The position numbers and the translations under genes are program-made. A model generated the notes under the pieces. The model did not search any database. It saw nothing but the letters and a program-made list of their open reading frames with translations, and was not told the DNA's origin. A stretch of DNA of 64,000 nt. It comes from Macrostomum lignano (Eukaryota). The DNA is taken from the NCBI GenBank assembly GCA_002269645.1, contig NIVC01001680.1:1-64000 (forward strand), written 5' to 3'. Shown one piece after another: positions 24,126 through 52,606 of this stretch. The first letter of the stretch is position 1; every line of letters starts with the position of its first letter.

Positions 24126-26509
24126 ATGTGCTTGAAGCAGGTCCTCACCTTCGAAGGGCAGGATCTGGTCGAGGACGCCCTTTGGTCGCTGCGGCCTGGC
24201 TGGCTGGTCAAATTCAAAAGCGGGCACTCCTGGCAAACCGGGGTCTACATTGGCATCGGATTGCTGAGCATCTCCGAAAATGGCGAGTCGTTTGTCACGC
24301 CACGACAAGAGGAGTGTGATACTGGCAACACCAGTCCGCTGCATCACCTGGTCTGTCACCTACCCAGGTGCAGTTCCAGCCGTGAAGGTGTGCTAGCAAT
24401 CAAGGACTTTCGAGAATTGGCCGAGAACTCTGAATCCATTAAGGTTTATGAGTGCAACTGCGACGAGGCTAAGCGGAAGAGCGTCATTCGTGCCTGTCTG
24501 ATGCGGCTGGGAGAAGTGCGAGTCAATTCCGCCGAACTTTTTGAGCACTTCTCTGCGTATAGGAAGGGGCAGTGGAAAACAATTTTCACAAATGGCTTTA
24601 CTTTGCTTTGCGACGTTTTTAAAAGTTTCATTGGGCAGAGGCCTGCCACTGGAACAGCAAATGACTTGTCATCGGATTTGTGAGTAGGCGAAACATTTTC
24701 TTAATCTGGCATCAACTTGGGTCTTTTTAAGATCGGTTTTCTGAGTTTCTGGCGGTGACATCAAAGTCTGAGTAGGACACTGACATCACCAGGGACTCAA
24801 ACATGTAAATGGTGCTTGGGTCATCAGGGGTAGTTTTATAAAGTGCCAAGGCTTCACCATCTTACGTGTACATTTTGCAATTTCCACTCACTAATACAGT
24901 TATCACATGACTATAAGCGATAAACCAATTACAGGCACATCTTTCTGCTGGAAAACACATCTGACTGGGTTGACGCTATTTCTCAAGAAAGCCGCCAACG
25001 ACTAAGCGACTTCTCTAGAGCGTTGCTGGTTTCACCAAATTATGAAACAGCAAATGGCTTTGAGACATTTCTAAGTTGGATTGCGGGACTTGAAAGCGAC
25101 AGTCGTGGCAGCGGGACGGCTGCCTTGACAACCTCTGCGTCACATTATCTGCGTTCGTTTACCAGCGCCAGGATTTCGCCGAAGTCAAAATGGTCTGGCG
25201 CAGCAGTGCAGTTTGAGAGGCTTAACGACAGTCTACAAGGTACGACCATGATAGTGTGGGTAACGGGTGCAAATGTACATTTATGTTTACTTAGCGGGTA
25301 AATTGTACCCTCAGCTCGACTCTCGTACCAAACTACATGTACATGTACTGTAGCTACATGTAGCTGCGTTCGATGCCTTGAGGCTTGAGTCAACCACAAA
25401 CAAAGTGCGGGGTTGTGTGTGTGTGATCGTATCTTTGTCTTGCCTCCTCGCTCCTGAACTGTAGCCCTGTGAAATAAATGCGTCAATATATTTAAGGTTC
25501 ATTTTTTTACCATACATTAATTCGGCCTATAGTTGATTTTAAGAGCTCGATCATTTTGTCATCTGACATTTCAGGACTCGACTCTTTCTTTAACGAGCTA
25601 CTGAATAGCTCCACCAGAAGGTGACTAATGTTTTCAATAGCTACATGAAATTACATACCAGACATTGCGAGTATGCCATTAGTAAACTAACTTTGCACTT
25701 CTTGTACTCCTAACTTCAGCGAGGAAAATGCTGCAATTGCCGCTCCTGAGACTCGCACTACCCGACGCAACCCTCCGTCTCTGGATTGCTACCCGGTAAC
25801 GTCTCCGCAAGGATTCTGCGCGGTCATCAACATCAACAACTACGATGACAATACGAACCTTGGCCGCCGCTCCGGATCAGAGCACGACGTTGCTCGCATC
25901 AGAGAGGTGTTCGAAAGCTCAACTTTGTGATAGAAGTCAAAGAGGACTTGACGTCACACGAAATCGACAGTTTTTTGACGAATTTAGCCCACGACGAAAG
26001 GCTGGAACAGCACGGATGCTTTGTGCTCTTCTTGATGGCGCACGGCTTGAGGCGAGAAATCTTCGGTTGCAACGGAATGCCAATAGACTTAAGCCGCATC
26101 GTTCAGTCATTCAGCTCCACATTTGCCCGGGCCTGCAAGGTAAGCCCAAGATCATCGTGATTCAGGCTTGCCGAGGCACGCGACTTCAATTCGGTCGCGC
26201 GGCCCCTTGAGAGATAGCTCGTCGGATAATGGAGAGTTCGGGTGCTACTCTCCTAGGGGCAAAGACTTCTTGGTGTGCTTTGCAAGCGGCGGAGATACTC
26301 CGGCTTTTCGAGATGCAAATACCGGTTCCGACTATGTACAGGCACTGTGCCGCGAGGTTGAGACGCATCACCAAAGTGAGCACATTGTGGACATTGTCAC
26401 CCGCGTCAACAATGCAGTTTGGCGAGCTCCGGTGCAGCAGGGTGAAGTGCAACTGTACACAGCTCCTGAGTTTACTAGCAGTCTCACTAGGAAGTACTAC
26501 TTGAGCTAG
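24126..26509 (+). CDS. Gene 1: catalytically degenerate LRAT/PLAAT-like domain + helical linker + caspase (HG, QACRG); 4 exons; three apparent 1-nt deletions in the caspase exon
   Basis: Exons 24126-24679 (phase 2), 24935-25239 (phase 1), 25575-25620 (phase 2), 25720-26509. Caspase motifs: GFCAVININ, RRSGSEHDV, LMAHG (26035-26046), KPKIIVIQACRG (26163-26177), DFLVCFAS, GSDYVQALC, APEFTSSLTRKYYL. Frameshifts near 25915, 26120 and 26180-26207. Confidence 0.8.
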
Positions 26510-27371
26510 TTGAGATCCAGCTTTATTAACTGGAAACTGATTTAATAAAAAACTACTGCTTTCCCTTCATAGTATTTGAAAGTACCTCCTTCAGCTAATT
26601 ATGTTGATTTCTGAGTAATGTGAAGTTGAAAATTAAAATCCATTATCCAATCGAGCTTCATTTTGCCGTATTAACGCTAATTAGTTACCCGATCAACTTG
26701 ACTTGAACGCGTAATTGATCTTTAAAAAGCAATGCGTTCTTTCGGTATAAAACGTCTCTTATCAACTACTTAAGATTCACAGATCATTACCGTTTTTAAA
26801 ACAATACCTGTTATTTTCATGTACGCTACAGTTTGTATTGTAACGCTACCCAGCTGAAAAAATGCTTAGAACTTTTGCTGTTTCTTTTCTACCGTCGCGC
26901 TTTAAAAAATTTATACATTTTTCCACAATATAATCACTGTATACTTATTTATCAAAAAATAACTTTGCACTCTTCCGTAGATCACCTGATTTTGCATACG
27001 ATGTTTTGTTTTTTGAAAAAAACGTCTACTGAGCAGTTTCCGACGAGTCCACTTGGTCAATTGCCTTGAGAAACAAAAATGAAAAAGAATTGTGCGTTTA
27101 ACTGTTCAAAGACAAGACTATTTTTCTTGCTACGGAGGAATGAAATTCTGCTGTTCTGTTGTAGTTGTTGTCTGCATAGTTGGACATTAAAAACAGCCAG
27201 TCCTGCATTGGTGCACTTGTGGCAAACTACGGCAAGTCCTTGGAATTGCCGTGGATTTTTCTTTTAAATTAAAGCATGCACACAGACTACTCAACTCATC
27301 TATCGACGCGTGTACGTTCGGTGAGTTTAAGACATGCGCTACTGCTAAGGCACTTTGCTAACTTTGAAAAA

Positions 27372-30439
<3,068 letters not shown>

Positions 30440-31156: not shown

Positions 31157-32716
31157 ATGTGCGTCGGATTCACCAACGCTTACAAAGACTTCCCGTACTG
31201 GAAGGTCAAGGAGGCCCTGGCCGCCATGACCCCGGGCTCGGCCGTCAGCTTCAACCGGATCGGCTTGTTCCACTTCGCCATCTACCTCGGCCTCGCCTGG
31301 CCCAAAGAGACCCTCGACGAGCCGATCCCGCTGGTGTGCCACTTCTCCGGCGACGCCAGCTCGGAGCCCATGGCCTCGGTGCGGCTGGACGACTTGCGCG
31401 AGGTGGTGCAGAACTCCACGGTGCGGGTGTACAAGTGCAGCTGCGAGCCGGCCAAGCGGATGCGGGTGGTCAGGGAGAGTCTGGCTCGGGTTGGCGAGGA
31501 GGGCTACAACCTGGTGACTAACAACTGCGAGCACTTCGTTCGCGACATCATCAACAATAGAAAGTTCAGCTACCAGTCCTTCTGGACGTTTGCTGCGCCG
31601 CTGGTGCAGCTGCCCCGGCTGCTCATCGGAGCGCCCATCGGCGGATCCATCGCTTCGTCGGCCTCGTTGAGCGCCTGCGTTGCCAGCAGTCTGACAAAAT
31701 TCGCGTAAGACTTCATCAAACCGTTTGATTAAACGAGCTTAAACTATTCATTAGTGCTATTAGTCCTCGTACTAATAGCGATGGACGATAGAGATTCCAG
31801 GTGACATTAGATGACTTACTTACTTGACTTAGCTGCAGGGCGGTCCGAAGACGCAGCGGGGAGGCGAGCGTCGCTCATTCCGCTAGCCCCTGAGAAGTCC
31901 GCATAGGCTAGGGCACAGAGCCGGTCAGGGAGGTCTTCCGGCCCCGTCTGTAGCGTTGTCTTCAGTGGGGAAGACGGAGGCTCGTTTGGTAGCTCGGAGG
32001 AACCGGATGAGTCGTTGGATGTTCTCAGGCCGGCAAGCGTCGTCCAGAGACGGGTTGGGCCCGAGGTGATTGAGCCGGTCTCGGTTGCAGGCCGGGCAGT
32101 AGCAGAAGAAATGCTTGGCGTCTTCGTTCTCGAAGTTGCAAAAGCGGCAGAGTTCGTTCCGGCGAACGCCTCGGAGGAACCGTGGACGTCTGGCAAAGCA
32201 ACCGTGACCTGTGAAGGTCATAGTGAAAGCGCGGATATCTTTTCGATTTTGGTTCAAAGGATTCTTTGCAGCTTGGTGACGGGCAGGGCATGCCGCCCAT
32301 TAGATGACAATCATGAGCCTTGTCTTTCTTTCAGAGCAAGACATTTATTGCCTCCCAACCGTCTCTGCAGCTCCTTAGGTCTCATCAATCCCGACATGGA
32401 CCTCCTCGAGATCTCACTCTCGGGCTCCTCCGGTCTGTCAGCATCCGTTGACGTGAATCCCTGCTGCACCAAGGTGTACACTGGGCCAAACCAGAGCATC
32501 GAGCAGGAGCTGTACCACTGCCTCACCTGCGGCATCACCGGTAGCAGGGTCGTGTGCCGGGCCTGCGTGTTCATGTGCCACACCGACTGCGACACCAGGT
32601 GCTTCAATGACGGTCCAGGATTTTGCGACTGCCAGCACCAAATGTGCCTGGTCAGTTCGGAAGCAGCTCCATTCGACGAGCCCACTGAGTCTGCGGAGTC
32701 TGTTGTAAATAGCTGA
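31157..32716 (+). CDS. Gene 3: LRAT/PLAAT-like domain (H, H, NNCEHF) + hydrophobic segment + UBR-box-like zinc finger; 2 exons, ~297 aa
   Basis: Exon 31157-31704 (donor GC|GTAAGA, phase 2) + 32371-32716 (acceptor CTGCAG|C). FHFAIYLG, VCHF, YNLVTNNCEHF; C-x17-CLTC-x8-CRAC-x3-CH-x2-C..CDC..C. Confidence 0.85.
31814..32290 (-). mobile_element. 5'-truncated non-LTR retrotransposon 3' end in the gene 3 intron
   Basis: Minus-strand FTGHGCF..LCRFCNFENEDAKHFFCYCPA (LINE C-terminal CCHC region) followed by a (GTAA)n-like tail at 31814-31831. Confidence 0.75.
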
Positions 32717-33348
32717 CCGTGTTTGGATATACCGAGCCAATTTTAACAAAACTGGGCAGTGTCGAATCTGCTATTCCATGCACACTGATTGCAAAAACTT
32801 TCATTTAGAAATCTCGCTTCGTTTTTTACTGTTAAAAGGTGCGTGTTCGACTTATTTAAGTGAATATGCGTAATGTTTCATTCGCTGATCTACTGCTCGA
32901 TTCCTGCTTGAAGTGTTTGTAATTAAAGATCCATACAAAACATACATTGTTACATTATACTATGCTCCTCTAAACAAAATGAGTGATATAAATATAAGCA
33001 GAGTCAGTTTTCTATTCTTAGCCCTCACTTCTCTGTAATTGACGGGAAAATGAACCGAAAATATTTTCGTTGGATGCTCAAAAATAAGCATGACACAGCA
33101 AGAACGAATGCTATTTTCATATTCCTTGTTCACGAGAAGAAAGACGTGCGTGCTGGCATTTAAAGACGTCTCGTAGTAAATTTCCAAGAAATTCTACGAA
33201 AAATTTGCATTATCTTACTTGAATAAACTTTACTCTATTTAAGCGTACTAGCAATAGAAAAGGCTGGTCCTTCTGGCTTATTTTAACTTTGCTGTCAGCC
33301 AAGCACCCTGTCTAAGACTTTAACCTACCCGAAATTAGGAAACGCGCG

Positions 33349-34944
33349 ATGTGCCTTGACTCATTGGAGAGTCGCTGCGAGGGCGATGGTCAACTCTGTA
33401 GGGACTTCGGCACAACGGAGGCTGGATTGGCGCGAGCGCTCATCGAAGCATCGCCAGGCTCAATCGTCAGCTTCGTGCTCCGGCCCAATCGATCATTTGG
33501 AGATCTGATCTGCCATCGACATTTCGGAATCTATCTTGGTCATGCATGGATTGCCAAGTACCACCAGGCTCTGGTTTGCCACAGTTACAAAAATCGACTG
33601 ACAGTGTCGAATTTTCGCGACTTGGCTGAGCTATCAATGGAAATCCGAGTTTACAAGTGCGACTGTGCCGATGACCGCGACCAATTTGTTGCTGAGTGCT
33701 TCCGCCAGTACGGTAGCTCGCCTGAGGGTACCTGTCTCGCTAGTATCAAACGAATTGTTTCACCTGAAAGCACGAAAGAGCCAACGGCTGTCACCAAAGG
33801 ATGGTTCAAGCGACTGCTGTCGAGGTATGGACCATCGGTTCTCTCGAATTCTGGACTTTTTAAATGGCGTCTTAGTGATCCGGCGCTGTCGAAGACTGAT
33901 GAACCGCATTGCGTTGTCCTCGACGGGCTGCTCGATTCACTGGCTGGCTTGGATGAAAACTGGTAAAGACTGAAGTGCAGTTGAATATCTATTTTCTGTT
34001 TTTTGTCTATGGTATTCTATGGGATTAATACATCCACTAGGTAACCTATACGATAAAAGCATTCAAGACCATTATAGTAACACAAGTAAAACTATTGTAT
34101 CTATTAAAACTTGTTTCATCAAAATTGGCCCAGTAGTTTCGGAGGAGATATGAAACGCACATTACATACAAACAGCGCGTCACTTTTAGTATATTGAGTG
34201 TTCTCACACAGCCTTTTGCGACCTTACAGAACTACCTGAAGGCGTACAACCTGTAGTCTTCAAGTGCCTAAAGTTTTGATTCGTCAATTTTTTCAGAGAT
34301 CTATGGGGTCTTACCAAAATCGCATGCCGAAATTTGCCAGCATAAGATTTCCGAATGCCCTGAATATTTTCTATTTGGCATTAGTTACAGAGGGGGACAC
34401 TCTGTATACAGGGGTGAGGGTTATGTATTCACAGACTTTAGTAGCAACTACAAACTGAAATGATCCCTGTGACTGCTGCTGGAAGGTTGCCAATAACCTT
34501 CTTTAGAAGGCAGGCATTCAGGCAGATACATGTAAACTTCCTGTCGTCAAAGTTTTGCAAAACGATCCACAGAGCCTTTCTTCTAAACCATTTCGCAGTC
34601 TCATCGGCCTACTGAGCTCAAAGTTGGACATGCTTGAGGTCACTCTACACAGACAGCAAGTGGGCAGCTCTGCCAGCCCTAGCATTGCCATCCGCATCAG
34701 CAATCGCTGCACTCGAGACTTCACGGGTGAGGATGCCCAGGCTCACCAGGAGTTGCACGAGTGCCTCACCTGCGGCATCCGCGACGATCAAGCGATCTGC
34801 AGGCGCTGCGCAGAAGTGTGCCACGCCAATTGCTGCACCCAGAGGCTCAACGGGGATAAAGCTCGAGAAGTGACAGGGTACTGCGACTGTACACATGACT
34901 GCTCACCCGAGCTCAGGCAGGATTCCCATCGGAACCGATCCTGA
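33349..34944 (+). CDS. Gene 4: divergent LRAT-like domain + UBR-box-like zinc finger; 2 exons, ~319 aa
   Basis: Exon 33349-33962 (donor TG|GTAAAG, phase 2) + 34599-34944. RHFGIYLG, VCHS and YKCDC align with the paralogues; NCEHF is replaced by GTCLAS. Second exon: CTRDFTG..QELHECLTC..ICRRCAEVCHANC..YCDC. Confidence 0.78.
34114..34195 (+). mobile_element. Helitron/Helentron-type (DINE-1-like) terminal fragment
   Basis: TTTCATCAAAATTGGCCCAGTAGTTTCGGAG..ACATACAAACA..CTTTTAGTATAT resembles the terminal signature of Helentron-derived elements. Confidence 0.4.
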
Positions 34945-35995
34945 ATGTTGGCATGAGTTGATTCCATTCGAAGAAACGTATTACATGTACCATCAGCCAT
35001 GTATAAAATATCATTTAAATACGCTCGTACATTGGTCTCTACTGTTATGCCTACGTGATCGTTAATTTTGCTTATATAAAAGTAATGTCGCACGGATTAG
35101 AACAGTGAGGCATCGACAATTCAAGTTAGGATGAATCACATTGGCCACTATAATTTCGAGTGCTTACTAGTCATCGCTCGCATTACTATATAAACCTAAA
35201 CCCATTGGTGATAATCTCTTTCCACTCGTGTTCACTGTTAATTTCCCATTCATATCCATTAAGAAAGTCAATTAGTCTCTGCACCTGCCGTGGCTAATAT
35301 AAAACTAAGAACTGTGACAAAAATTGTTTTTACTTGCGCCATTTTTTACTTTAGTACCTGCCGACATGCGGTTTATCCCTTCTCTTTCTTAAATATTGCT
35401 GTTACGTACATTAGTATTGAGTATGCACTACCCGACCTGAGGTCGCTGACAAATATGTAATTTTACATTACATCAACGTTCAGCCGACGTTTGACGACTT
35501 TTATTGCTGTACGGGGTATGTTGTTTTGTACAATTCCATTAAATACTATTCCTAATACAACTAATATGTTTAGCTAATAAAAGCATCATTTGCATTCGCA
35601 AGCGAGAAGCCATTAAAATACAAAGCATACAAGAGATTAATAAACGACATAAACTAGCTGCATGGATCTCTCTCATTGTGGCGTGGACGTACGCTCGCAG
35701 CCAGTCAGAAAAAAATTCAAGGGTGTAAAGACTTGTTGAAAAATACGCGTACATATTAAAACAGTGTGGACTTGCTAATTCTCGTAATGAAACGTTAATA
35801 TAGAGCGTTTGAGATAAAAATAGAATGACGGTTGGAGAGAGTGTACAGAGAATGCGTACAGCTCGTAAAGATAAGTGTACAGCGAAGCAAGTTCTGTCGC
35901 TTACAAGAAGTCGCAATTTTCCAGACTGTGGTTTGCTGTCGCTAATGCCCCCCCGCAACATTTTGTAGAATTCGTTAATTCTAGCTAAATAAGCT

Positions 35996-38900
35996 ATGCT
36001 GCCTCCAGCTAAAAAGGAATCAAGAAAGCGAATACCTTCAGAAGTCTATGAAGACTTTATGATGGCCATTGTGACCAATGACACTGAAATTATTGACGAG
36101 TTCTTGAAGATTCAGCCACCACTCGACAAAAGAGTGTCATTTCTAGACGACAGTATGACCCCTGACGCTCACGTGTCTTCTGGGAAGCCAGAAATTCTGA
36201 GAAAGCTAATTAAGGCCAACGCTGACGTCGACGTAAAAGAACTTAACGACACTTCGCCACTGTACGTTGCTGCTCAAGAAGGACACGACAAGATCGCGGA
36301 CCTTCTAATTGAAGCGCAAGCGGAAATCGACTTCCAGACCACGGACGGGACTTCACCTCTTTACCTGGCTTCGCAGCACGGCCATCACAGAGTGGTGAGG
36401 TCGCTCATCGAAGCTCAGGCAAGTGTCGATTTACGAAGAAGCAACGGAGCATCGGCGCTGTGTATTGCGGCCCAGAACGGGCATCGGCTCGTGACCGACT
36501 TGCTGATCAGAGCTCAGGCGGATGTCAACATTCGGGCGGACAATAGCACAACACCTTTGTACATAGCTTCGCACAACGGCCACCATCTCATCGTTGAATT
36601 GCTGCTCAAGGCTCGGGCCGATCCAAACCTGCTACACTCTGACGGTACTTTTCCACTGTACGTTGCCGCTTACAATGGTCACTATCAAGTGGTTTCACTG
36701 ATAGTCGATGCCGGCGCGGAAGTCAATCTGCGAGACAGTCAAGGCTGTTCCTCGTTGATCATCGCCTCACAAAATGGTCACCGGCAAGTAGTAGATGTGC
36801 TCATTTCCGCAAACGTCGATGTCAATCTTCCAGCTAACAATGGCGCAACGCCGATCTACATGGCCTCGCAGGAAGGTCATAAGCAAGTGGTCGACGTGCT
36901 TATCAAAGCACAGGCTGATATAAACCTTTTAGCGAATGGCGATGCTTCGCCAATTTATACGGCAGCTCAGGAGGTCACGACCAAGTGGTTGACTCCCTTA
37001 TCCATGCGAATGCCGATGTCAATTTTCAGAGGAGCAATGGCCAATCGCTTCTATTTATTGCCGCGCAGGAGGGTCACGAGAAGGTTGTGGAATTGCTTCT
37101 GAAATCGGGCGCAGACCCCGACCTACCAACTGGCAACGGTTGGTTGCCTCTGCACGCAGCTTGCAAACAAGGTCACCACATGGTCGCTGATCTTCTTATC
37201 AAAGCCCAGTCTGATATTAATCACTTGGCTCAAGGCAGCCTGTCGCCTCTGCTATTGGCTATTGAACAAGGTCACAGCAGAGTTGTAGAGCTACTCATCA
37301 AAGCGCAAGCCGAAGTCGACCTAACAATCTCAACAGGAGTATCACTTTTCGAAGTGGCTAAAATGCTGGGTCATGACCGAGTGACAGCACTACTTCAGAA
37401 AGCAACCGCCAGTTCCACGGCGTCGTCTGAGACCCTTCAGGCAAACGAATTAAAGAATTCAAAGTAACGAAGGGTTTTTTATTTCGTCAACTACTTTGAA
37501 GTACTACTTATTTTAGATAGCAAAAACTTAAAATTACACTAATGTTACTTTTCAGACAAGCGCTAGAGGACGTTCAATTGAGCTTGGAACTAAACTCAAC
37601 CCTTACTAAGGCAGGGTTTGTGAGCTCCCGAGCTGCAATGCAGAGCGTATTGGCTGACGTTCTTCAAGAGATTCTTCGAAAGCGATGGAATGGTGGCCAA
37701 ATCTTCGTAGTTGGAAGCTACTCTGAAGGCTGGGGAAACAGTCTAAAAACGTTGGACGGCAGACCCGATGTAGAGTCCGACATAGACGTGATGAGGCTGA
37801 TAGATGGGAGACTTTACCACCTGAATTACCGGTGCAACTGCTCCGAAGATGAGAAACTATTGGTGGACTACGAGAATGGGCACATATTTTGTCCTGGATA
37901 TGGTCTGTGCTAATTTGTTCATCATGTAAAAATCAACTTGCCTCACCGGTCTTAATGCGCCCGTTTATGTCTGCTTTCAGCTTCAACTCCCGCGAACCCG
38001 ACAACCGGCTCCAATCTGAGGCCAGCTGTGGACGAAGTGAGCGGCGTTCGGCTCTGCTGCTACCCCCTCATCGCACCTCTGCTTACGCAGAGACTCGAAG
38101 ACTCCCAAATCCCCGGCTCGGTTTTAAGTGCTCTTCAACAGGAACTAACCTCGTCGCCATGTCACGTGGTACACGCCGCACCGCCCGGACATGCTGGTGA
38201 GCAGCTCCGGTTGAGCACGACATTTTTAGAGAGGCGCCTGTTGCGAAGTCTCAGCACTCTACAAGGTCAGCTCTTTGTTACCCTCAAGTACATAGTAAAA
38301 AAGGTCATTTGTCACAAAGAAGGCTTCAATGCGGCGGGTTTGAAGGCGTATCACATGAAAACAATTACGTTTCGAATGCTCGAGCGAACACCAAGAGAGA
38401 TCTGGAAGCCGGAGAACTTAGTATTCCTCATCAGAGAGTCCCTGCTCATGCTGATTAATGACGTGAGAAACGGCTGCACACCTCAGAATACAGATGGTCG
38501 AATCATGGATCACTTTTTCCTATGCGACGCCGCGCTCTACCTCAAAGGTGTCGATCGCAGCCAGTCGATGCTGCAGACTTTGGAAGCAACAACCCAAGTC
38601 TTGGAAGAAGTGACAGCGAATTTGCCTCAGTTTATACTGAACTTTATAAAAAGTTTGAAACAAGTCAGCGACTCAGGAAGATTCTACTTTCATCCCTTCC
38701 TCATCTTGCCGTATCTTAACCAAAATCCCATTCCACTATCTGGGAGAATTGAGTACCACGAAATTTACGATGTCGTCCGAAAATCATTGCTTTGCCTGAC
38801 CCACGACGGCAGCAGCTATGAGTCGCAACTGTATCTCACAGAGATTATCGCTAGGCTACCAGACAGTGCCCGCACAACCCGTGAGGTTCTCAGAGCGCTG

Positions 38901-39491
38901 GCGTGTCTAAAGTTCGGATACAAGGACTCTGCCAAGAAGATAATAAAGTACACCAGGTCCTTCAAGGTGAGCCGAGGCTTTGATTTACAAGCGGAGGACC
39001 TTTTAGCTGCCGAAGCGACTCCGGAGAAAGTGTGGAATCATCTGAGAACTCAAGATTCTGCCTGGAAATTCAACTTTCATTTTGAGACGAGGCCAGAATT
39101 TCAGTTTCTTCCCGAGCTCTGGGCCGCCTGCTTCCCAACTCAGACGCTGAATTTTGACACCTGCTTTTACATCAACTTTGATGCCATGCTGCAAAGCATG
39201 CGCTTTCAACTGCTGGCGGACGAGGAGGAGACGACTGTCCAGTCTTGGATCCGTGATGTGGCCGGGCGGGAGGACGCCGACGAGCAGGAAGTGACGGTGG
39301 CGCTGCTCTGTTTGCGCGATGAAGCATTGTTCAAACCATTGCTGGACCGAGCGCAGTGGTTTCCGGCAGGAATTCCTAAAAGGATCCTTGAGGAGCTCAG
39401 GGCAAGATTTCAAGAGGAAAATTGGAACGACTCTAGCCAGTGGGGTCTTCAGCAGTTGAACCGAATTTTAGAACGCTTGCTACTTCGCTAA
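35996..39491 (+). CDS. Ankyrin-repeat (~13) cGAS-like receptor / Mab-21-family nucleotidyltransferase; 3 exons, ~1108 aa; one apparent 1-nt deletion near 36973
   Basis: Exons 35996-37463 (phase 2), 37556-37902 (phase 1), 37981-39491. Ankyrin consensus repeats; NTase motif VVGSYSEG..ESDIDVM (37710-37793); VDEVSGVRLCCYP (candidate third Asp); Mab-21 C-lobe LSTLQGQLFVTLK..LKAYHMKTITF..W..NL..MDHFFL. Confidence 0.85.
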
Positions 39492-40981
39492 ATATTACAA
39501 GCTAATAATGCTACAATTCAGATAAACTCCACGACATCAGACTTTAAAAAGATTTTTGATTCTGACAAACTGAATGAAATACATGAATGATTACAACTGA
39601 AAAATTATCTGAGTTTCATATTACAATTGCAATGCAGTTTTTTAACACCGAGTTCTAATTCGGTACTATCAGTAGCAGTATTTGAATGTTTTACGAGTGC
39701 AAGGGGAAAATATAAAGTTGTGGCTGCCCAAGAGAAAATATTTCTGACCAATGTGAAGCCTCAGGACAGTTGAATGTCATGTCAGAGACATGAGTGTCGA
39801 TCATGTCTGTGATGGATTTTGCTAGAATTTCTATGAGCATTATGTCTCTACCTTCTTGAGTCATTAGGTAAACTACTATATCATCTGCAGTAAGGTTTTT
39901 AAAATTCGAAACTTTCTCCGAGATTTCCTGCTCACATTTACAACGGAGTGTGCTACCAAGGTTCCGACTACACTTCTACCCCACATGGCGCTTTGGACAG
40001 GTCCTGTTCTCGTAAGAGATCTTTGGTCTCGCAGTCCTTAGATATTGTTTCACAGGCCAGTTTATGGTTTTTTAATCTAAACTGTTAGGGTTTAAAATCT
40101 GGATTTCAAGATTCTGGATTTATAATTTCAAGAACATACTTTTCGATTGAGTAGCGCTATTTGAACCTGAGGCAGTGACATTTTTGCAGAGTTCTCTACT
40201 CTTTGTCTCCAGTGTGTCTCCAGTATCGTGTGCATTCTACTGAAGTGTAATTCATATAGATATTTCTACGAGGCATAAAGAAATCATATGCATTTCTAGT
40301 TAACCACAACAAGCGGCTGTTATAGTTCAAATAACGTAGGTTTTTCTTTTTACTATTTTACGAGACGTTCCTTAATCACCCAACCCACTCTTGGCACCAC
40401 CCTCATTTAGGACTTTAATGCAATAAAAACACTGTTTAGTTTATAATCTTTTAACAGCTATTATTTTTATCGTAAATCCTTGATTTACCAGACAACTACA
40501 TTCGCGAACTTGACTTTAGTTTAGCCTAGTCTGCGTATACTTGCTATCGCTGTAAATCATTCTCCTTATCTACGAGCGTAACTCCGCGGAGAAGAAATGG
40601 ACGCCCGCCCTAAGTCACTCGCTGTGTACACCGCAACCTGTGCCTCATTCACACCGTCTGTAGGCTTTTAAAGACGTCTAACTCACGCCTGCTTGCTCTC
40701 TGGTGTGCCTGCACGTTTCTAAGGTGAAGTTCGTGAAAATTTCTGTCCTATAATTGTTGATTTGCAAGGACTATACTTTTGCAAACCCAAGATAAAGACT
40801 CTAGCAAATTTTGATAAAGCGAACTCAAAATACTCGCTAGCAAGTGTTGAGTCAAGGGCATTGTTGATCAAGCAGTCTGACTCAAGATTTCGTCAGAACT
40901 ATTTTATTCTTTGAAAACGAAAAGCGTACAGCCAGCCAACAAAGATCAGAGAGCTTTAGCCTGGAGTCTACCTGTAATGTC

Positions 40982-42358
40982 ATGTGCGTGCGGCTCAAGA
41001 CCGGATTCACCGATTTCAAGCCGCAAAGAATTCGCAATGCGATTCGAGCCACAGTTCCCGGAGGCGCCGTCAGCTTCAACAGGATCGGATTCCACCACTT
41101 CGCCATCTTCCTGGGCTGGGCCCGGCCCAAAGGCGACGACTCGGAGCCGATCCCGCTGCTGTGCCACCTCTCCGGGGACGCCACCAGTCATCCGACATCG
41201 GTTCGACTGGAAGACTTCAGAGACATCGTGCAGAATAGCATCATCCGAGTCTATAGGTGCTACTGCAGCGCTAGCAGGAGATCCCAGGTGATACTGGAGT
41301 GCCTCTATCGAGTAGGCACCATTGGATTCAACCCAGTCACTAACAATTGCGAGCACTTTGTTCGGCAGGTGATTTGCGGCGAGAAGGTCAGCCACCAGAC
41401 AAATCTGACGCTGGCTGTGCCGCTGCTCCGCCTGCCTCGCCTCATCATCGGCAGCTCCATGGTGGGCGCGGCCGCTCTGTCTGAGTCGTTCAGCTGCGCC
41501 GGGAAATTAGAGGACAGCAGGTAAATAAGAATACTCACCCCTGCTTATGAATTGGGTGTCTCAACATTTGACTGCTGAATATTTTACTGCCACAAATTAA
41601 CAGCCGATCCTAACCATAACCTAAACACTACCCTAAACCCTAAACTAAAACCTCAACCTAATCCGTAACTTAAGCCCTAACTTAAACCCTAACCTAATCC
41701 CTAGCCTTAAACACTAACCTAAACCCTACCCTAAACCATAACCTATTAAACCATTACCTAAACCCAAACCTAAACCCTACCGTAAACCATAACCTAAACC
41801 ACAACCCTATATCGTCAAACTTCAGGCTCCCGGTTGTGCAAAAGGGGAACTAACTTGCATAATATTAAATAGCATGAACGATGCAATGAAATATTATCGG
41901 CCATAGTACGCTCGTATCACAGAAACATAATATTTCTATAGTATGTGCTACTGCTGCTGATCTGATCTATCTGTTAAACATGATAAACAATCATAAAAAT
42001 ACATGATCTTCGTTTCAGATCTCTAGGTATGCTCAACCCGGACATGGATTTGATTGAGATCACCTTGTCAAATCGTGGTCTGAATTTGACTAGCATCAAG
42101 TTAAACGCCAGCTGCACAAGAGATTTCGAAGGCTGCAGCCGCTTTTGCAAGCAGACTCTGTACAGTTGCAACACCTGCGCAGGTGCTGCAGTTTGCAAGA
42201 CGTGCCAGAAGTTCTGTCACAAGGACTGCCAGCTCACAGCGGGCAAGGTGCAGGACGGTCAGTGCCACTGCACCCACAGCAAGAGAAAAGAGGCGACTCG
42301 GTTGCACCCAAAAATGATTTCAGAAATCAAGTCTCAAAGAGAAATTAAAATGGTCTAG
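40982..42358 (+). CDS. Gene 6: LRAT/PLAAT-like domain (H, H, NNCEHF) + UBR-box-like zinc finger; 2 exons, ~292 aa
   Basis: Exon 40982-41520 (donor AG|GTAAAT, phase 2) + 42019-42358. HHFAIFLG, LCHL, TNNCEHF; CTRDFEG..YSCNTC..VCKTCQKFCHKDC..QCHC. Confidence 0.87.
41609..41809 (+). repeat. Degenerate telomere-like (CCCTAA/CCTAAA) interstitial array in the gene 6 intron
   Basis: About 200 bp of imperfect CCTAAC/CCTAAAC units. Confidence 0.75.
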
Positions 42359-43433
42359 AATGATTCATTCAGAATTACAATTGGCTAATGTTTTTAGGCA
42401 GCAATGTTTTTTACAAAAAATTGGCTGTTACAGTATTGGTTGGTGCTTTTGCAGTTTTTGTCGAGAAGAGAGATTAAATATTCAACATGCTTTGGTCAGT
42501 GAGCATGAAAGCACCGTCAAGAGCTACTTAAATATAGCTCTTATAGATTTTTTGTGTTCCACATGGACTGCTTTCTCTGTATTGATTCTCCATTGCTTCG
42601 TTCATAGTTACATTACATTTACATTTGAATAGCAATCGAGAATAAACCCTATTATTCAGTAGATTCATATCAGACAAGTTGAGACTTTCACGCGTTCTAA
42701 ACAATGGAAAGATAGTGCTGCACAGCTTGAGGGTGCAATAATGCCTCTCAGTACTAGACCACGAGTGCCTATGGATAAAGTTGTCCACTCGTGGTCTAAG
42801 CATTATTGCACTCTCAAGACGTGCATCTGTCACATTGCGACTGGCAACATAGCCAAGTGAGGAGAAGACGTCAAATTTACCATAGACAAAGATCTAGCAA
42901 GTACTTTTATTTAAAGTCTATGGTGAAAACCATGATTAACTGCATTCACTTGTTGTCTATACTAGCCTATCACCAATGAAGACAGCCAAAGTAATTTGAA
43001 ATTTGATTTGATTGGACGATTAAGAGACTGGAGTGCAGAGCGATTTGATTGGTCTCGTGGGCAGAGAGTATGATGTACCGGTACATTGATTACGCGTGAC
43101 GAGGAACAGTTGAATTGACAATCAGATAAGATTTTCATTTTTAGTATATGGATAATAGGCGAGTCTATACTCATAAATGTTTAATTAGCCGTTTTGACTC
43201 ATCACTGTGTCTGGATAAAAAGGTTCTTTATAATGTCTACAATAGTATATGTTGATACTACACTATTAATATAATAACACCGGTAAAGTAATCTTAAAAA
43301 GTCAACAATAAACAAATAAGTAAATTAGTATTGTTTAATAATATTACTACTAACCATTGCAATAAACTGACTACAGTGACTAGTATATAATTAAAATCAA
43401 TTCTGATGCGACTGATTGGTTATCATTCCTTTA

Positions 43434-43687
43434 TTTCATTTCCTGTAGTCCTGTGTAGCCCAATCATTTCCTGTAGTCCTGTGTAGCCCAATCATTTCCT
43501 GTAGTCCTGTGTAGCCCAATCATTTCCTGTAGTCCTGTGTAGCCCAATCATTTCCTGTAGTCCTGTGTAGCCCAATCATTTCCTGTAGTCCTGTGTAGCC
43601 CAATCATTTCCTGTAGTCCTGTGTAACCCAATCATTTCCTGTAGTCCTGTGTAGCCCAATCATTTCCTGTAGTCCTGTGTAGCCCAA
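43434..43687 (+). repeat. 28-bp minisatellite (CATTTCCTGTAGTCCTGTGTAGCCCAAT), ~9 copies
   Basis: Direct tandem array with period 28. Confidence 0.95.
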
Positions 43688-44260
43688 TACTAAACAAAAT
43701 TTATTTTTTGAATCCGATGTTTTTGAGTACAGTACATTTGACAACCATATTAACATTTTTAAGTGTAATTAACGACAAAATATTTTGGAGAGAAAGTATA
43801 AAAATTATGTATCTAGTTACATATTAGCAATGCATCACATGTAGCCAACGCAATTTCATAGTCAAATAGGTTTGAATTGAATAGCAGGTCTTGACGTCTT
43901 CATGCGATTCTGCGTCAAAGTTTCTTCTCCTTCTTCTCGATATTTTTAGCGGCATGAGCCCGTGCGGCCTGTGGTGAATGTAAACACTGCTTGCCAAGCC
44001 CTGTGTCCAGCGCAGTACGTGTTCGAGCAAAGAACAACTAGATCAAAACGATATTAAACCTCGTGGCCAGTCTGCATATGCTTGACAAAGCTTGTAAGCT
44101 CGATTCTCTAGCCAAAAAAATGTAGATAAATATGAATAAAGCAACATTGCAAAGCTGAAACGTAATTACTTAGGTAAAGCTGGAAGAAAGCTCGATTCTG
44201 TGGCAGATTTGATTCAAAATTGAATTTTTTGGTATAGTTAGACCGGCCGGATTCGAACCA

Positions 44261-45614
44261 ATGTGCGTTGGATTTCTGAACGGCTACAAAGACTTCAAGC
44301 CGAAGCTATTCAACGAGGCGATCGCCGCTGCAGTTCCCGGGTCCGCGGTCAGCTTTAACAGGATCGGCTTCTTTCATTTTGCCATCTTCCTGGGCTGGGC
44401 CTGGCCCAAGGGCGGCGACTCGGAGCCCATCCCGCTGCTGTGCCACCTTTCCGGAGACGCCAGCACGAAGCCGATGGCATCGGTTCGACTCGACGACTTC
44501 AGAGACATCGTCCAGAGCTGTACCATCCGAGTGTACAACTGCAAATGCAGCGCGAAAAAGAGATCCGAGGTGATACTGGAGTGTCTCTATCGAGTTGGCA
44601 AGATCGGTTACAACCCGCTGACCAACAACTGCGAGCACTTCGTCCGGGGAGTGATCTGCGGCGAGCGCGTCAGCTACCAGACCCGCTGGATTCTGGCTGC
44701 CCCGATAGTGCAAGTGCCGCGCATCGTCGTCAGCACTGCGTTTCTGGGGGCCGCCACCTCCGCTGCTTCGTCCAGCTGCATATCGAAACTCGAGACTAAA
44801 AGGTGAGGGATCAAGGTTCTTTTACAGAATCACCACTAAATTTTTACTCTTCAATGGATTGCCTTTTATCAATCTCAAAATTGAAACTGAACTTCACAAA
44901 GTTCGAAATTTTACATCGTCAACTTTTTTCAAGTTGTGAACTAGCGGAAGTGGCTGGAGTAGTGATTTCGAGATTGCGAAAGATTCTGCTTTTATGAGAC
45001 GATGTGCAATCCACAAAAGTCATGGAGTTCAAATCATGGGGACCAAATAATGTCAGCTAAAGTATGCAGCTCTATCTTGGACTTGATGACATTTGGATTC
45101 CAAACCCAAGTAGGTCACATGTTCGGAAGTGATAAGATCGCTGAATATTTGAGTGTATTCGCCAGCTGTTATAATGTGCTTGTTAAGTGCGAGTTAGATC
45201 AGTACGTTTACATGAAAACCATTGCTATTCCGCACGAATATCTCATCAAGAAAGCAACTTGCAATCTTCATCAGGTCCCTAGGTCTTCTAAATCCAGAGA
45301 TGGACCTGGTTGAAATCCTCGTATCAAACAAGGGCCTGAATTTGAAAGGCATCAGACTGAATGCCAGCTGCACAAAGGACTTTGATGGCTCCAGTCGATT
45401 TCCGATGCAGACGCTTTACAACTGTGAGTTCTGCAACGGCAGCAACTCAATCGCTGTGTGCAAGCCCTGCTCGAAACTCTGCCATCCAACTTGTGGATCG
45501 CTAGAAGGCTCTGTGGCTCAAGGTTCGTGTCGTTGCAGCCACCAGCCCATCGCAAAAGCGGCAACACAAACGACTCCGCAGACTTTGAAGAGTTCAGGCA
45601 CTTACACCCCATAA
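44261..45614 (+). CDS. Gene 7: LRAT/PLAAT-like domain (H, H, NNCEHF) + UBR-box-like zinc finger; 2 exons, ~293 aa
   Basis: Exon 44261-44802 (donor AG|GTGAGG, phase 2) + 45275-45614. Close paralogue of gene 6. FHFAIFLG, YNPLTNNCEHF; CTKDFDG..YNCEFC..VCKPCSKLCHPTC..SCRC. Confidence 0.87.
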
Positions 45615-47448: not shown

Positions 47449-48042
47449 TTACCGGCGGCGCAGTAGGGGTTGAAGAACATGCTTGAGAAAAAGGCTCAGA
47501 GAGGAAAACGCGCGCGAGAAAGGGCTGTTGCGAGCCCGACCATGTTGTCGCATCACCCAGTGGATGAACGAATTTAGATCCTTTCCACTAGCAAGTTTAA
47601 AAAACAGATAGAACAGAATCCAGGCTCCACAGTGGGCGGTACGGGGATCCTGCACCGCATAGCGCGTGTAACGCCAGTTTTTTGGATCTCCACAATTTCG
47701 GCTCATCCACTGGGAGATTTCAGGCAGCGGGTGCAAACCTAGCGGATCAAAGTATTCACCTATCCTAGCTCGTCTAACAGCGCCAATAGGGCCTGCACAG
47801 ACCCAGGCAGCAACCCAGTGTTTTCCGGGCAAATTGCTAGGGTCCGTGTTTACGATGAAAAAATAGTTACGCGTGTCTTGAAAGTACGGACTCGTGTTTA
47901 GAGTAGGGATCGTTGGTAGAGAATTGCTTGGGTAAACTCCCATAAAAACTGCATCAGGATAAATACGCAATAGTTTTAGGCATACCGAGCGCAAAAACAC
48001 ATTAGTTACGCCAGATAGGATAGTAGTGTTATCTACTTCCAT
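47449..48042 (-). CDS. Adenain-like (C5) maturation cysteine protease
   Basis: IVNTDPSNLPGKHWVA, EYFDPLG, VQDPRTAHCGAWILFYL: His/Asp/Gln/Cys catalytic motifs. Confidence 0.92.
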   Translation of the reverse strand: MEVDNTTILSGVTNVFLRSVCLKLLRIYPDAVFMGVYPSNSLPTIPTLNTSPYFQDTRNYFFIVNTDPSNLPGKHWVAAWVCAGPIGAVRRARIGEYFDPLGLHPLPEISQWMSRNCGDPKNWRYTRYAVQDPRTAHCGAWILFYLFFKLASGKDLNSFIHWVMRQHGRARNSPFSRAFSSLSLFLKHVLQPLLRRR

Positions 48043-49825: not shown

Positions 49826-49859
49826 ATTTTTAATTGTTATTATGTTCCCATTTCACAGT

Positions 49860-51098: not shown

Positions 51099-51315
51099 CG
51101 GTTTTTGTATCGGTGATTCCTCCCGCACCGCTGCTCTGTGGCAAGTTATCAGTTGATGCAGAGCGCGTCACCGTCATGCAGCACCTAATGTTCTGTATGG
51201 TGATATCGCCCGCGTCGGGAGTGTCCTCGTTATGGTGGAGTGCCCCGCCTAAGCAGCCTTGCAAAAGTCTCACAACCAAATGAAAAACAAAGCGTAAAAT
51301 TTCGCGTAGTTCCAT
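51016..51315 (-). CDS. Small hypothetical protein, 99 aa
   Basis: ATG ORF with a TATAAG 48 nt upstream, like neighbouring genes; no recognisable domain. Confidence 0.5.
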   Translation of the reverse strand: MELREILRFVFHLVVRLLQGCLGGALHHNEDTPDAGDITIQNIRCCMTVTRSASTDNLPQSSGAGGITDTKTDGSEKETSDAKSETPEPAAVRKRKRTD

Positions 51316-51393
51316 TATCAGAGTGTGTTGATACTCAATCCGCGATGCGTCCGACCAGTTAGCTTATAGCTGCTACAATATTTAACTACAAAC

Positions 51394-52099: not shown

Positions 52100-52103
52100 A
52101 TTT

Positions 52104-52555: not shown

Positions 52556-52606
52556 ATCCTAATCTCCTCACTCTATATTTAATGATGTGCTTGTTTGCTT
52601 ATAAAT

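What the first reader, a model, noticed from the sequence alone, without database searches (positions are those of the whole stretch)
31157..45614. Four LRAT/PLAAT + UBR-box-like zinc finger fusion genes
Genes 3, 6 and 7 have a complete His-His-Cys triad, a PLAAT-like hydrophobic segment, a shared SLGxxNPDMDLxEIxL motif and a C-terminal finger resembling the FBXO11-type UBR box, with H-x2-C in place of H-x2-H. I do not recognise an acyltransferase-UBR architecture from known families. The finger could be a ligand sensor gating the enzyme.
Basis: partly seen in the sequence, partly recalled or inferred. Interest (0 to 1): 0.75.

Follow-up and report, generated by a model that had tools for sequence, protein, structure and literature searches.

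The report
Flatworm PLAAT enzymes with UBR finger
Four neighbouring genes of the flatworm Macrostomum lignano really do join a PLAAT/LRAT-type lipid-modifying enzyme to a divergent UBR-type zinc finger; I found this combination nowhere else, sister genes next door join the same enzyme head to a caspase, and what any of them do is untested.

Summary
Four two-exon genes lie at 31157-32716, 33349-34944, 40982-42358 and 44261-45614. All have canonical GT..AG introns in phase 2, at a position also used by an independent NCBI gene model of a paralogue. Exon 1 encodes an LRAT/PLAAT domain. Pfam passes for three genes, the modelled fold matches PLAAT2/3/4, and the His-His-Cys triad is intact in A, C and D. 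A moderately hydrophobic helix follows. Exon 2 encodes a beta-hairpin (SLGxLNPDMDLxEI) and a Cys/His finger. The finger fails Pfam's zf-UBR cut-off (17-19 bits against 25.2). A family profile nevertheless hits the solved UBR4 (E 2e-8) and FBXO11 (E 5e-7) UBR boxes. A profile-profile comparison with bona fide UBR units gives 98.5% probability. The H-x2-C in place of H-x2-H is real. Only Macrostomum proteins showed both domains among 1.84 billion representatives. The Asp that anchors N-degrons in UBR boxes survives only in A and B. Function is inferred: probably a membrane-active lipid enzyme placed or controlled by a fast-evolving recognition finger. This is a new variant of known kinds, of moderate interest.

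The parts
31157..31704 (+). Gene A exon 1: LRAT/PLAAT domain + hydrophobic segment. Family-conserved Met-Cys start at 31157; the longest ORF starts at 31103. H39 at 31271, H62 at 31340, Cys of NNCEHF at 31526.
   Evidence: Pfam LRAT 50.7 bits; splice and frame; residue coordinates
32371..32716 (+). Gene A exon 2: SLGLINPDMDLLEISL hairpin (32372-32419) and UBR-like finger (32465-32638). Keeps the C-D-C Asp.
33349..33962 (+). Gene B exon 1: divergent LRAT-like head. Both His are kept, NCEHF is replaced by GTCLAS, and Pfam gives no hit.
   Evidence: My spliced model was not among the sequences the submission check recognised. The head groups with the caspase-type heads.
34599..34944 (+). Gene B exon 2: degenerate linker motif and UBR-like finger (34708-34896). 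C-D-C Asp kept.
   Evidence: Pfam zf-UBR 17.0 bits, below cut-off; finger HMM 115 bits
40982..41520 (+). Gene C exon 1: LRAT domain (H at 41096 and 41165, Cys at 41348) + hydrophobic segment.
   Evidence: Pfam LRAT 35.6 bits. UniProt models P0002/P0003 of M. lignano are near-identical.
42019..42358 (+). Gene C exon 2: SLGMLNPDMDLIEITL (42020-42067) and finger (42113-42277). C-H-C in place of C-D-C.
   Evidence: no Pfam zf-UBR hit
44261..44802 (+). Gene D exon 1: LRAT domain (aa 26-135, 44336-44665; H39 at 44375, H62 at 44444, C124 at 44630) and hydrophobic helix (aa 139-163, 44675-44749).
   Evidence: Pfam LRAT 42.6 bits. AF2 pLDDT >90 over the LRAT domain. Foldseek to PLAAT3/2/4: prob 1.0, TM 0.65-0.72.
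45275..45614 (+). Gene D exon 2: SLGLLNPEMDLVEILV beta-hairpin (45276-45323) and UBR-like finger (45369-45542). C-R-C in place of C-D-C.
27276..30439 (+). Paralogue with the same LRAT head fused to a caspase domain. Four exons: 27276-27938, 28492-28662, 28743-28814, 29714-30439. Family-type Met-Cys start at about 27372. The caspase QACxG Cys is replaced (QTSQK).
   Evidence: P0010 maps at 98-100% identity. Pfam LRAT 44.3 and Peptidase_C14 111.8 bits.
24126..26512 (+). Second LRAT-like + caspase paralogue. LRAT-like exon 24126-~24518 (NCEHF degraded to ELFEHF); caspase exons ~25775-26512 (QACRG kept). Exon joins not determined.
   Evidence: tblastn; ORFs; Pfam Peptidase_C14 on 25845-26210

Best explanation
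These are four tandem paralogues of a Macrostomum-restricted subfamily of PLAAT/LRAT-type (NlpC/P60-fold, Cys-His-His) phospholipid acyltransferase / phospholipase A enzymes.

Shown: in place of the usual C-terminal tail anchor they carry an internal, moderately hydrophobic helix, a Ser/Ala-rich spacer with a conserved Cys, a short beta-hairpin and a divergent three-zinc UBR box of the UBR4/FBXO11 subtype. The hairpin and the finger are encoded by a second exon. The same LRAT head is joined to a caspase domain in sister genes of the same array.

Inferred mechanism: in A, C and D the LRAT head is a catalytically competent membrane-lipid enzyme. The hydrophobic helix gives it membrane affinity. 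The fast-evolving UBR-like finger is a protein- or peptide-recognition module that decides where or when the enzyme engages a membrane. This would be the natural counterpart of engineered PLAAT3 fused to a recruitment domain. B looks like a catalytically doubtful, regulatory or decaying copy. The array as a whole looks like a lineage-specific cell-death or defence toolkit.
For: Gene structure:
- Canonical splice sites, in frame.
- The same intron position and phase in an NCBI model of paralogue P0001.
- Five M. lignano database proteins with both parts.

LRAT identity:
- Pfam passes for three genes.
- The triad sits in >=90% conserved columns of 61 homologues.
- AF2 model pLDDT 75 and pTM 0.75, with PLAAT3/2/4 as top Foldseek hits at prob 1.0.

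Finger identity:
- Family profile against PDB sequences: UBR4 box E 2.2e-8, FBXO11 E 5e-7, followed by UBR4 homologues (BIG), PRT6, UBR1, UBR2 and UBR5 interleaved with weak PHD/MYND-type finger hits.
- hhalign 98.5%, E 3.7e-15 against 29 units. The four of their 18 source proteins that I scanned pass Pfam zf-UBR.
- Ten ligand columns are occupied in 6 of 7 members.

Selection: dN/dS is below 1 in both parts (LRAT 0.20-0.44, finger 0.31-0.50). The finger's dN is 1.7-3.9 times that of the head across the six pairs, while the Zn ligands stay fixed.

Modularity: LRAT-UBR and LRAT-caspase heads form one clade against 16 other LRATs, 92/100. P0009 and P0010 have LRAT + Peptidase_C14.

Precedent:
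- The PLAAT layout is Pro-LRAT-TM-CT.
- The hydrophobic segment is needed for organelle deformation.
- Recruitment through a fused heterologous domain is enough to direct damage (PMC9338259).
- PLAAT4 is linked to apoptosis and pathogen restriction (PMC2656461 and PMC10102619, listed).
Against: - No expression, localisation or activity data exist for any member.
- The finger fails Pfam's own threshold. Its modelled fold matches FBXO11 only weakly: rank 44, E 1.9, prob 0.54.
- The hydrophobic segment is borderline (1.35-1.76) and interrupted by a conserved Pro-Arg. If it truly spanned a membrane, the zinc finger would sit on the non-cytosolic side, which is unusual.
- Member P0005 has lost one Cys pair, and B has lost NCEHF, so constraint is uneven.
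- Gene neighbourhood is weak functional evidence in animals.
- Distant LRAT+hydrophobic homologues (L003, L004) show no finger within 6 and 2.8 kb downstream.
Confidence: 0.55

Rival explanations
1. N-terminus sensor. The UBR-like finger is a true N-recognin that binds new protein N-termini, for example those made by the sister LRAT-caspases or by foreign proteases. It thereby switches on or recruits the lipid enzyme.
For: - UBR4-type boxes bind N-degrons (PMC10687169).
- Genes A and B keep the F/Y-C-D-C motif whose Asp anchors the alpha-amino group.
- Caspase-fused paralogues lie in the same array.
- Every paralogue starts with Met-Cys.
Against: - The anchoring Asp is Arg in D, P0001 and P0005, His in C and Gln in P0004.
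- One of the two neighbouring caspase domains has lost its catalytic Cys.
Confidence: 0.1
2. Lipid- or anion-binding finger. With H-x2-C the finger acquires a C-x2-C-x4-H-x2-C core like C1 or PHD fingers, and most members place a basic residue where the Asp sat. It may therefore bind an anionic lipid head group or another acidic ligand and act as a second membrane anchor.
For: - UniProt names P0003 'Phorbol-ester/DAG-type domain-containing protein'.
- Weak PHD hits (SP140, CHD4, PHF21A; E 0.04-0.5) appear in the profile search.
- Arg or His replaces Asp in most members.
Against: - UBR boxes score six or more orders of magnitude better than PHD fingers.
- Pfam reports only zf-UBR (plus a weak zn-ribbon_14 hit for gene A), with no C1 or PHD hit.
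- The upstream Cys and the Q-x-L-Y-x-C-x-T-C motif are UBR-specific.
- The loop between the Cys pairs is much shorter than in C1 domains (sequence; C1 spacing from my own knowledge).
Confidence: 0.1
3. The LRAT head is mainly a non-enzymatic adaptor or prodomain. It would be an oligomerisation or membrane-docking module in the position where DED, CARD or ANK prodomains sit in caspases. The tails (caspase, UBR finger) would then be the functional ends.
For: - The same head sits in the prodomain position of caspase-domain proteins.
- Catalytic motifs are lost in gene B and in the 24126 copy.
- Lophotrochozoan caspases are known to carry unusual prodomains (PMC11463336).
Against: - A, C, D, P0001, P0004, P0005, P0009 and P0010 all keep H, H and NNCEHF intact.
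- dN/dS of the head is 0.2-0.44.
Confidence: 0.15
4. Gene-prediction artefact or decaying duplicates. The LRAT ORFs and finger ORFs are not parts of one functional protein, or the copies are pseudogenes in a highly duplicated genome.
For: - No read-level evidence was available here.
- Introns in the window are 470-670 bp, against 74 bp in P0001's gene.
- My model of B was not among the sequences the submission check recognised.
- B and P0005 are degenerate.
Against: - Four of four pairs have the same order, strand, intron phase and open frames.
- The intron position is conserved in an independent model.
- dN/dS is below 1 in both exons.
- Zn ligands are invariant across 27-68% identical paralogues.
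- The finger exons have no start codon of their own at the conserved motif.
Confidence: 0.08

Closest known systems
Vertebrate PLAAT1-5 (HRASLS) and LRAT, Pfam PF04970
   Same: Same fold and the same His-His-Cys (NCEHF) triad. A hydrophobic stretch begins a few residues after the conserved S-x-Q, as in other family members.
   Different: - The hydrophobic stretch is internal and weaker, with a conserved Pro-Arg.
- It is followed by a folded zinc-finger domain instead of ending the protein.
- A roughly 11-residue insertion lies between the two His. This rests partly on my recollection of PLAAT3 numbering.
- The N-terminus is a conserved Met-Cys.
UBR boxes of UBR4 (8J9Q/8J9R) and FBXO11/UBR6 (5VMD/7YRB), the Cys-type 'subfamily 2' of PMC10687169
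   Same: Full-length alignment with all Cys/His ligand columns in register, including the extra Cys before the first His.
   Different: - The second His of H-x2-H is Cys.
- The last ligand appears to be an invariant His two residues after C-x-C, instead of a more distal Cys.
- The alpha-amino-binding Asp is lost in most members.
- There is no E3 ligase domain (no RING, HECT or F-box).
- The finger scores below Pfam's cut-off.
Multi-UBR-box proteins of protists (e.g. Tritrichomonas 'UBR-type domain-containing protein') and a UBR-calpain fusion (P0063)
   Same: UBR4-type units used as mobile modules outside E3 ligases, in one case fused to a cysteine protease.
   Different: Those have canonical H-x2-H and C-D-C-G motifs, are often in tandem arrays, and none has an LRAT domain.
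Engineered recruitable PLAAT3 (FKBP fusions; PMC9338259)
   Same: A PLAAT catalytic domain plus hydrophobic segment, coupled to a separate recognition domain that decides which membrane is attacked.
   Different: That system is man-made. For the flatworm proteins neither activity nor recruitment has been shown.
Caspases with unusual prodomains in lophotrochozoans (ANK, kinase, PARP, Z-binding; PMC11463336)
   Same: The sister genes P0009 and P0010 put a non-DED/CARD domain in the prodomain position.
   Different: An LRAT prodomain is not among those reported. That survey found only a kinase-type prodomain in M. lignano.

Membership tests
LRAT/PLAAT family (Pfam PF04970, NlpC/P60 superfamily) | Scores above the Pfam gathering threshold | tested here: met
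   A 50.7, C 35.6 and D 42.6 bits against 24.3. B has no hit.
LRAT/PLAAT family (Pfam PF04970, NlpC/P60 superfamily) | Catalytic Cys in the NCEHF motif plus two His | tested here: met
   H39, H62 and C124 with N123, E125, H126 and F127 lie in >=90% conserved columns of 61 homologues. This holds for A, C and D. B has both His and an aligned Cys, but the motif is lost.
LRAT/PLAAT family (Pfam PF04970, NlpC/P60 superfamily) | PLAAT-type three-dimensional fold | tested here: met
   AF2 pLDDT >90 over the domain. Foldseek to 7ZOM, 4DPZ, 7ZOT, 4FA0 and 4DOT: prob 1.0, target-normalised TM 0.65-0.72.
LRAT/PLAAT family (Pfam PF04970, NlpC/P60 superfamily) | C-terminal hydrophobic membrane anchor | tested here: inconclusive
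   A hydrophobic helix is present at the equivalent position, but it is internal. KD19 maxima are 1.35-1.76, and it has a conserved Pro and Arg.
LRAT/PLAAT family (Pfam PF04970, NlpC/P60 superfamily) | Phospholipase A / acyltransferase activity | not testable with these tools
   Needs enzyme assays.
UBR box (Pfam zf-UBR PF02207) | Scores above the Pfam gathering threshold | tested here: not met
   A 19.1, B 17.0 and D 19.1 bits against 25.2. C has no hit.
UBR box (Pfam zf-UBR PF02207) | Significant profile-level homology to solved or bona fide UBR boxes over the whole domain | tested here: met
   UBR4 box E 2.2e-8 and FBXO11 E 5e-7. hhalign 98.5%, E 3.7e-15 against 29 units; the four of their 18 source proteins that I scanned pass Pfam.
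UBR box (Pfam zf-UBR PF02207) | Full set of Cys/His ligands for three zinc ions | tested here: inconclusive
   Ten aligned ligand columns are occupied in 6 of 7 members, with H->C at one of them. An invariant His after C-x-C could be the 11th ligand. Zinc stoichiometry was not measurable. P0005 lacks one Cys pair.
UBR box (Pfam zf-UBR PF02207) | Asp of C-D-C that binds the N-degron alpha-amino group (UBR2 D150 / UBR4 D1715) | tested here: not met
   Kept in A and B only. It is His in C, Arg in D, P0001 and P0005, and Gln in P0004. The role of the residue is taken from PMC10687169.
UBR box (Pfam zf-UBR PF02207) | UBR-box fold | tested here: inconclusive
   Finger pLDDT is 60-86, modelled without zinc. 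FBXO11 7YRB is the only zinc-finger hit, but it is weak: rank 44, E 1.9, prob 0.54, rmsd 2.2 A over 37 columns.
UBR-family E3 ligases (N-recognins) | A ubiquitin-ligase module (RING, HECT, F-box or hemiRING) in the same protein | tested here: not met
   Pfam finds only LRAT and, below threshold, zf-UBR. The proteins are only 292-319 aa long.
C1 (phorbol-ester/DAG) or PHD finger | Recognised by the family's profile | tested here: not met
   No Pfam C1 or PHD hit. PHD chains score only E 0.04-0.5 in the PDB profile search. The UniProt name of P0003 is the only pointer.

The most novel reading that the evidence does not exclude
The LRAT-UBR proteins are protease-activity or N-terminus sensors wired to a lytic lipid enzyme. 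The UBR-like finger would recognise newly exposed N-termini made by the sister LRAT-caspases or by foreign proteases, or possibly the family's own processed Met-Cys N-terminus. It would thereby recruit or unleash a PLAAT-type phospholipase that ruptures membranes. That would be an N-degron-gated cell-death effector that bypasses ubiquitin altogether.
Probability: 0.08. Interest if true: 0.85.

Novelty: new variant of a known kind. Interest (0 to 1): 0.5.

Why it matters
UBR boxes are known almost only as substrate-recognition parts of ubiquitin ligases. PLAAT enzymes are known as tail-anchored lipid enzymes that can rupture organelles and restrict pathogens.

A natural protein that couples the two, with a sister that couples the same head to a caspase, would show two things if functional. 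First, a UBR-type recognition pocket can be re-used to aim a non-ubiquitin effector. Second, flatworms have built their own cell-death or defence modules by domain shuffling.

Macrostomum lignano is an experimental model with RNAi (own knowledge), so this is directly testable. It also adds an unreported prodomain type to the catalogue of invertebrate caspases.

Tried and rejected
- Alignment containing my model of gene B: the submission check did not recognise that sequence, so B was left out of the big searches.
- First AF2 run on the 6-sequence family alignment was useless, with pLDDT 42. It was replaced by a 61-sequence alignment.
- Profile search of the 5.8-billion set added no members beyond the five M. 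lignano clusters.
- Search with the finger-only profile returned nothing, not even the family itself, so it is uninformative.
- Foldseek did not independently confirm the UBR fold.
- Looked for finger exons downstream of the two more distant LRAT+hydrophobic homologues (L003, L004), by tblastn, HMM and Cys-pattern regex. None was found within the DNA held.
- The two P0001 loci are identical in the gene, so they give no information on selection.
- PDB sequence searches for the Mab-21/NTase-like neighbour gave nothing.
- Literature searches for Macrostomum+LRAT, LRAT domain+UBR and PLAAT+zinc finger gave no relevant paper.
- The PHD/C1 reading was considered and rejected on scores.
- Origin from the adjacent Maverick-like element was considered and rejected. 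The array lies outside that element's gene block and on the other strand, and paralogues sit in other loci without it.


Full report
ORIGIN AND GENE MODELS

The window is eukaryotic. The only close protein matches are to the free-living flatworm Macrostomum lignano. UniProt models P0002 and P0003 are near-identical to the third gene of the finding. P0010 maps at 98-100% identity onto window exons.

I call them A to D:
- A: 31157(31103)-31704 + 32371-32716
- B: 33349-33962 + 34599-34944
- C: 40982-41520 + 42019-42358
- D: 44261-44802 + 45275-45614

Every junction has GT..AG, keeps the frame, and is in phase 2 just before the SLG motif. P0001 is an NCBI gene model of a paralogue on another contig. 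It has a 74-bp intron at exactly the same position and phase. Five database proteins from M. lignano carry both halves in one chain. I had no reads, so splicing is strongly supported but not directly seen. My model of B was not among the sequences the submission check recognised, so B is the least certain.

THE N-TERMINAL HALF

- Pfam LRAT passes for A, C and D and fails for B.
- In a 61-sequence alignment of LRAT homologues, the columns holding H39, H62, G113, Y117, N123, C124, E125, H126, F127, S138 and Q140 of gene D are at least 90% conserved. The His-His-Cys triad of A, C and D is therefore the family's triad.
- An AF2 model built on that alignment has pLDDT 75 and pTM 0.75, with more than 90 over the LRAT domain.
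- Its best structural matches are human PLAAT3, PLAAT2 and PLAAT4, at probability 1.0 and target-normalised TM 0.65-0.72.
- B keeps both His and an aligned Cys but has GTCLAS where the others have NNCEHF.

THE MIDDLE

Directly after the conserved S-x-Q comes W-x-L-A-A-P-x-x-Q-L-P-R-L-x-x-G. This is where other LRAT proteins have their hydrophobic tail (see the sequences).

- It is only borderline as a membrane span: the 19-residue Kyte-Doolittle maxima are 1.35-1.76.
- It is predicted to be helical.
- A Ser/Ala-rich spacer with a conserved Cys follows.
- Then exon 2 opens with SLGxLNPDMDLxEI, modelled as a beta-hairpin with pLDDT about 70-75.
- A related LNPDMYVFLLRE occurs at the same place in the caspase-fused paralogue P0009. 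The hairpin is therefore probably older than the finger.

THE FINGER

Pfam's zf-UBR model gives only 17-19 bits for A, B and D and nothing for C, against a cut-off of 25.2. The evidence from profiles is nevertheless clear:
- Gene D alone finds the FBXO11 UBR box first (E 0.002) and UBR4 next.
- A profile of seven family fingers finds the UBR4 box at E 2.2e-8 and FBXO11 at E 5e-7. UBR4 homologues, PRT6, UBR1, UBR2 and UBR5 follow, interleaved with PHD/MYND-type fingers at E 0.04-1.2.
- The full-length family profile pulled out multi-UBR proteins from 1.84 billion representatives. The four that I scanned pass Pfam zf-UBR.
- A profile-profile comparison with 29 units extracted from 18 of those multi-UBR proteins gives 98.5% probability, E 3.7e-15.

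All ten invariant ligand columns are in register.

According to PMC10687169, UBR boxes bind three zincs, and UBR4-7 form a subfamily with an extra Cys ligand. The flatworm finger belongs with that subfamily. An invariant His two residues after C-x-C could serve as the last ligand; this is my inference. Structural confirmation is weak: FBXO11 is the only zinc finger in the Foldseek list, at E 1.9.

WHAT THE FINGER PROBABLY DOES NOT DO

In UBR2 and UBR4, the Asp of the C-D-C motif holds the alpha-amino group of the N-degron.
- Only A and B keep it.
- C has His.
- D, P0001 and P0005 have Arg.
- P0004 has Gln.

[quoted passage not shown] Canonical N-degron reading is therefore unlikely for most members.

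DISTRIBUTION

- A full-length profile search of 1.84 billion representative proteins gave two-domain matches only to the Macrostomum clusters P0004 and P0005.
- I inspected every other top hit with more than one matched stretch. Each was a tandem LRAT or a multi-UBR protein.
- The 5.8-billion set holds only five M. lignano clusters.
- Caveat: eukaryotic genes on unannotated contigs are called exon by exon there, so split genes can be missed.
- I checked two such exon-only relatives, L003 and L004, which are 35-46% identical and include the hydrophobic segment. I found no finger within 6 and 2.8 kb downstream.
- A survey of UBR-box architectures (PMC4506424) does not mention LRAT.

Upstream lie two paralogues whose LRAT-type head is joined to a caspase domain.
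- 27276-30439 equals P0010: Pfam LRAT 44 bits plus Peptidase_C14 112 bits, and its caspase Cys is lost.
- 24126-26512 has a degraded LRAT motif and an intact QACRG.

In a neighbour-joining tree, the heads of the UBR- and caspase-fused genes form one clade against 16 other LRATs (92/100). B's head groups with the caspase-type heads (76/100), though on a long branch.

All of these proteins, plus the L003 homologue, begin with Met-Cys.

Between B and C sits an ankyrin-repeat gene followed by weak nucleotidyltransferase and Mab-21-like signals, both below threshold. To the right lies a Maverick/Polinton-like element.

SELECTION

Nei-Gojobori estimates give dN/dS of 0.20-0.44 for the head and 0.31-0.50 for the finger. 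dS is close to saturation in places. The finger's dN is 1.7-3.9 times that of the head across the six pairs, while its ligands stay fixed. Both halves are therefore coding and constrained, and the finger is the fast-evolving part. That pattern is typical of a recognition surface; this last point is inference.

MECHANISM

Shown: this is a PLAAT-fold enzyme domain with an intact triad (A, C, D), a hydrophobic helix, a hairpin and a UBR4/FBXO11-type finger in one reading frame.

Inferred, from what is established for PLAATs (PMC9338259):
- The domain order is Pro-LRAT-TM-CT.
- The hydrophobic segment is needed for organelle deformation.
- Recruitment through a fused heterologous domain is sufficient to direct damage.
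- A C-terminal fusion makes full-length PLAAT3 diffuse until it is recruited.

On that basis the flatworm proteins most likely act as membrane-lipid enzymes whose site or timing of action is set by whatever the finger binds. PLAAT4's links to apoptosis and pathogen restriction (PMC2656461 and PMC10102619) and the caspase-fused sisters make a cell-death or defence role the leading guess. Nothing here tests that.

VERDICT

The architecture is a new variant built from two known domain families. It is restricted, as far as can be seen, to Macrostomum, and it is already present in databases only as uncharacterised 'LRAT domain-containing protein'. Interest is moderate (0.5): a clean, testable case of domain shuffling with an unusual use of a UBR box, but without functional evidence.

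Noticed in passing
window 24126-26512 and 27276-30439 (+): Two genes fuse an LRAT-type head to a caspase domain (P0010 = the second; paralogue P0009 is named 'Caspase-8-like' in UniRef). An LRAT prodomain is not among the unusual caspase prodomains reported for lophotrochozoans (PMC11463336). One copy has lost the LRAT Cys and the other has lost the caspase Cys.
   Followed up: partly
window 31157, 33349, 40982, 44261, 24126, ~27372; L003 5749: Every member of the LRAT-UBR / LRAT-caspase family starts with Met-Cys, even at 27-35% overall identity. This also holds for a 35-48% identical homologue from another sample. It could be an acylation site or a Cys N-degron. Annotated upstream starts (31103, 27276) may be too long.
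   Followed up: partly
window 35996-39491 (+): A strong ankyrin-repeat ORF (Ank_2, 291 bits) is followed by ORFs with sub-threshold nucleotidyltransferase (GS..G..D.D) and Mab-21_C signals, in the middle of the LRAT array. It is possibly an ankyrin-cGAS-like gene. There were no PDB sequence hits.
   Followed up: partly
window ~47449-62620 (-): A block of large intron-less ORFs typical of a Maverick/Polinton-like virus-like transposon. Pfam supports an rve integrase (49860-51128), protein-primed DNA polymerase B with an endonuclease VII motif (55879-58443), dUTPase (55022-55600) and deoxynucleoside kinase (60289-61014). By eye only, there is a P-loop ATPase-like ORF (53667-54371), a possible capsid ORF (48033-49364) and a possible adenain-like protease ORF (47449-48042). 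All reading frames listed are open. Ends and inverted repeats were not sought, and no DNA of the element was printed.
   Followed up: partly
window 33349-34944: Gene B looks chimeric. Its LRAT-like head groups with the caspase-type heads (76/100, long branch), while its tail is a UBR-type finger that still has the C-D-C Asp.
   Followed up: partly
genes D, C, A versus P0001 (L001 10001-10986): Synonymous divergence of the LRAT part (dS 0.53 for D versus P0001) is much lower than that of the rest of the same gene (1.3-1.8). This may indicate gene conversion between paralogous heads.
   Followed up: no
window 31816-32300 (-), inside the intron of gene A: Minus-strand ORFs with a Cys/His-rich stretch (C-x2-C ... 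H ... C-x-C) that resembles the zinc-knuckle tail of a retroelement ORF. The large introns here (470-670 bp, against 74 bp in P0001's gene) may hold repeat insertions.
   Followed up: no
window 8402-10346, 20401-20764, 21213-22085, ~27940-28090: Long low-complexity or tandem-repeat stretches that read as repetitive ORFs on both strands (SPSHCLPLT-like, GPVVSV-like, GKSGLSYLGNRDSHTWEIGTLIL-like and PTPHLLN-like units). There is also a run of Tyr codons at the end of exon 1 of the LRAT-caspase gene.
   Followed up: no
L002 16470-18537; L001/L002 8463-9471 (-) and ~14106-14285: The P0001 locus in assembly GCA_002269645.1 holds further LRAT genes. These are a head-to-head LRAT-UBR paralogue (311 aa), a 620-aa protein with many C-x2-C pairs ahead of a C-terminal LRAT domain, and an isolated match to the linker motif only.
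   Followed up: partly
P0063 (664 aa, metagenome); P0011/P0015 (993-1423 aa): UBR4-type boxes occur as 13-18-fold tandem arrays in unnamed eukaryotic proteins and as a pair fused to a calpain protease domain. UBR boxes outside E3 ligases are therefore more common than the literature suggests.
   Followed up: partly
genes A-D, spacer after the hydrophobic helix (e.g. D aa 164-172): A Cys in the Ser/Ala-rich spacer just after the hydrophobic segment (SxSC) is conserved in 6 of 7 members. It could be a juxtamembrane palmitoylation site.
   Followed up: no
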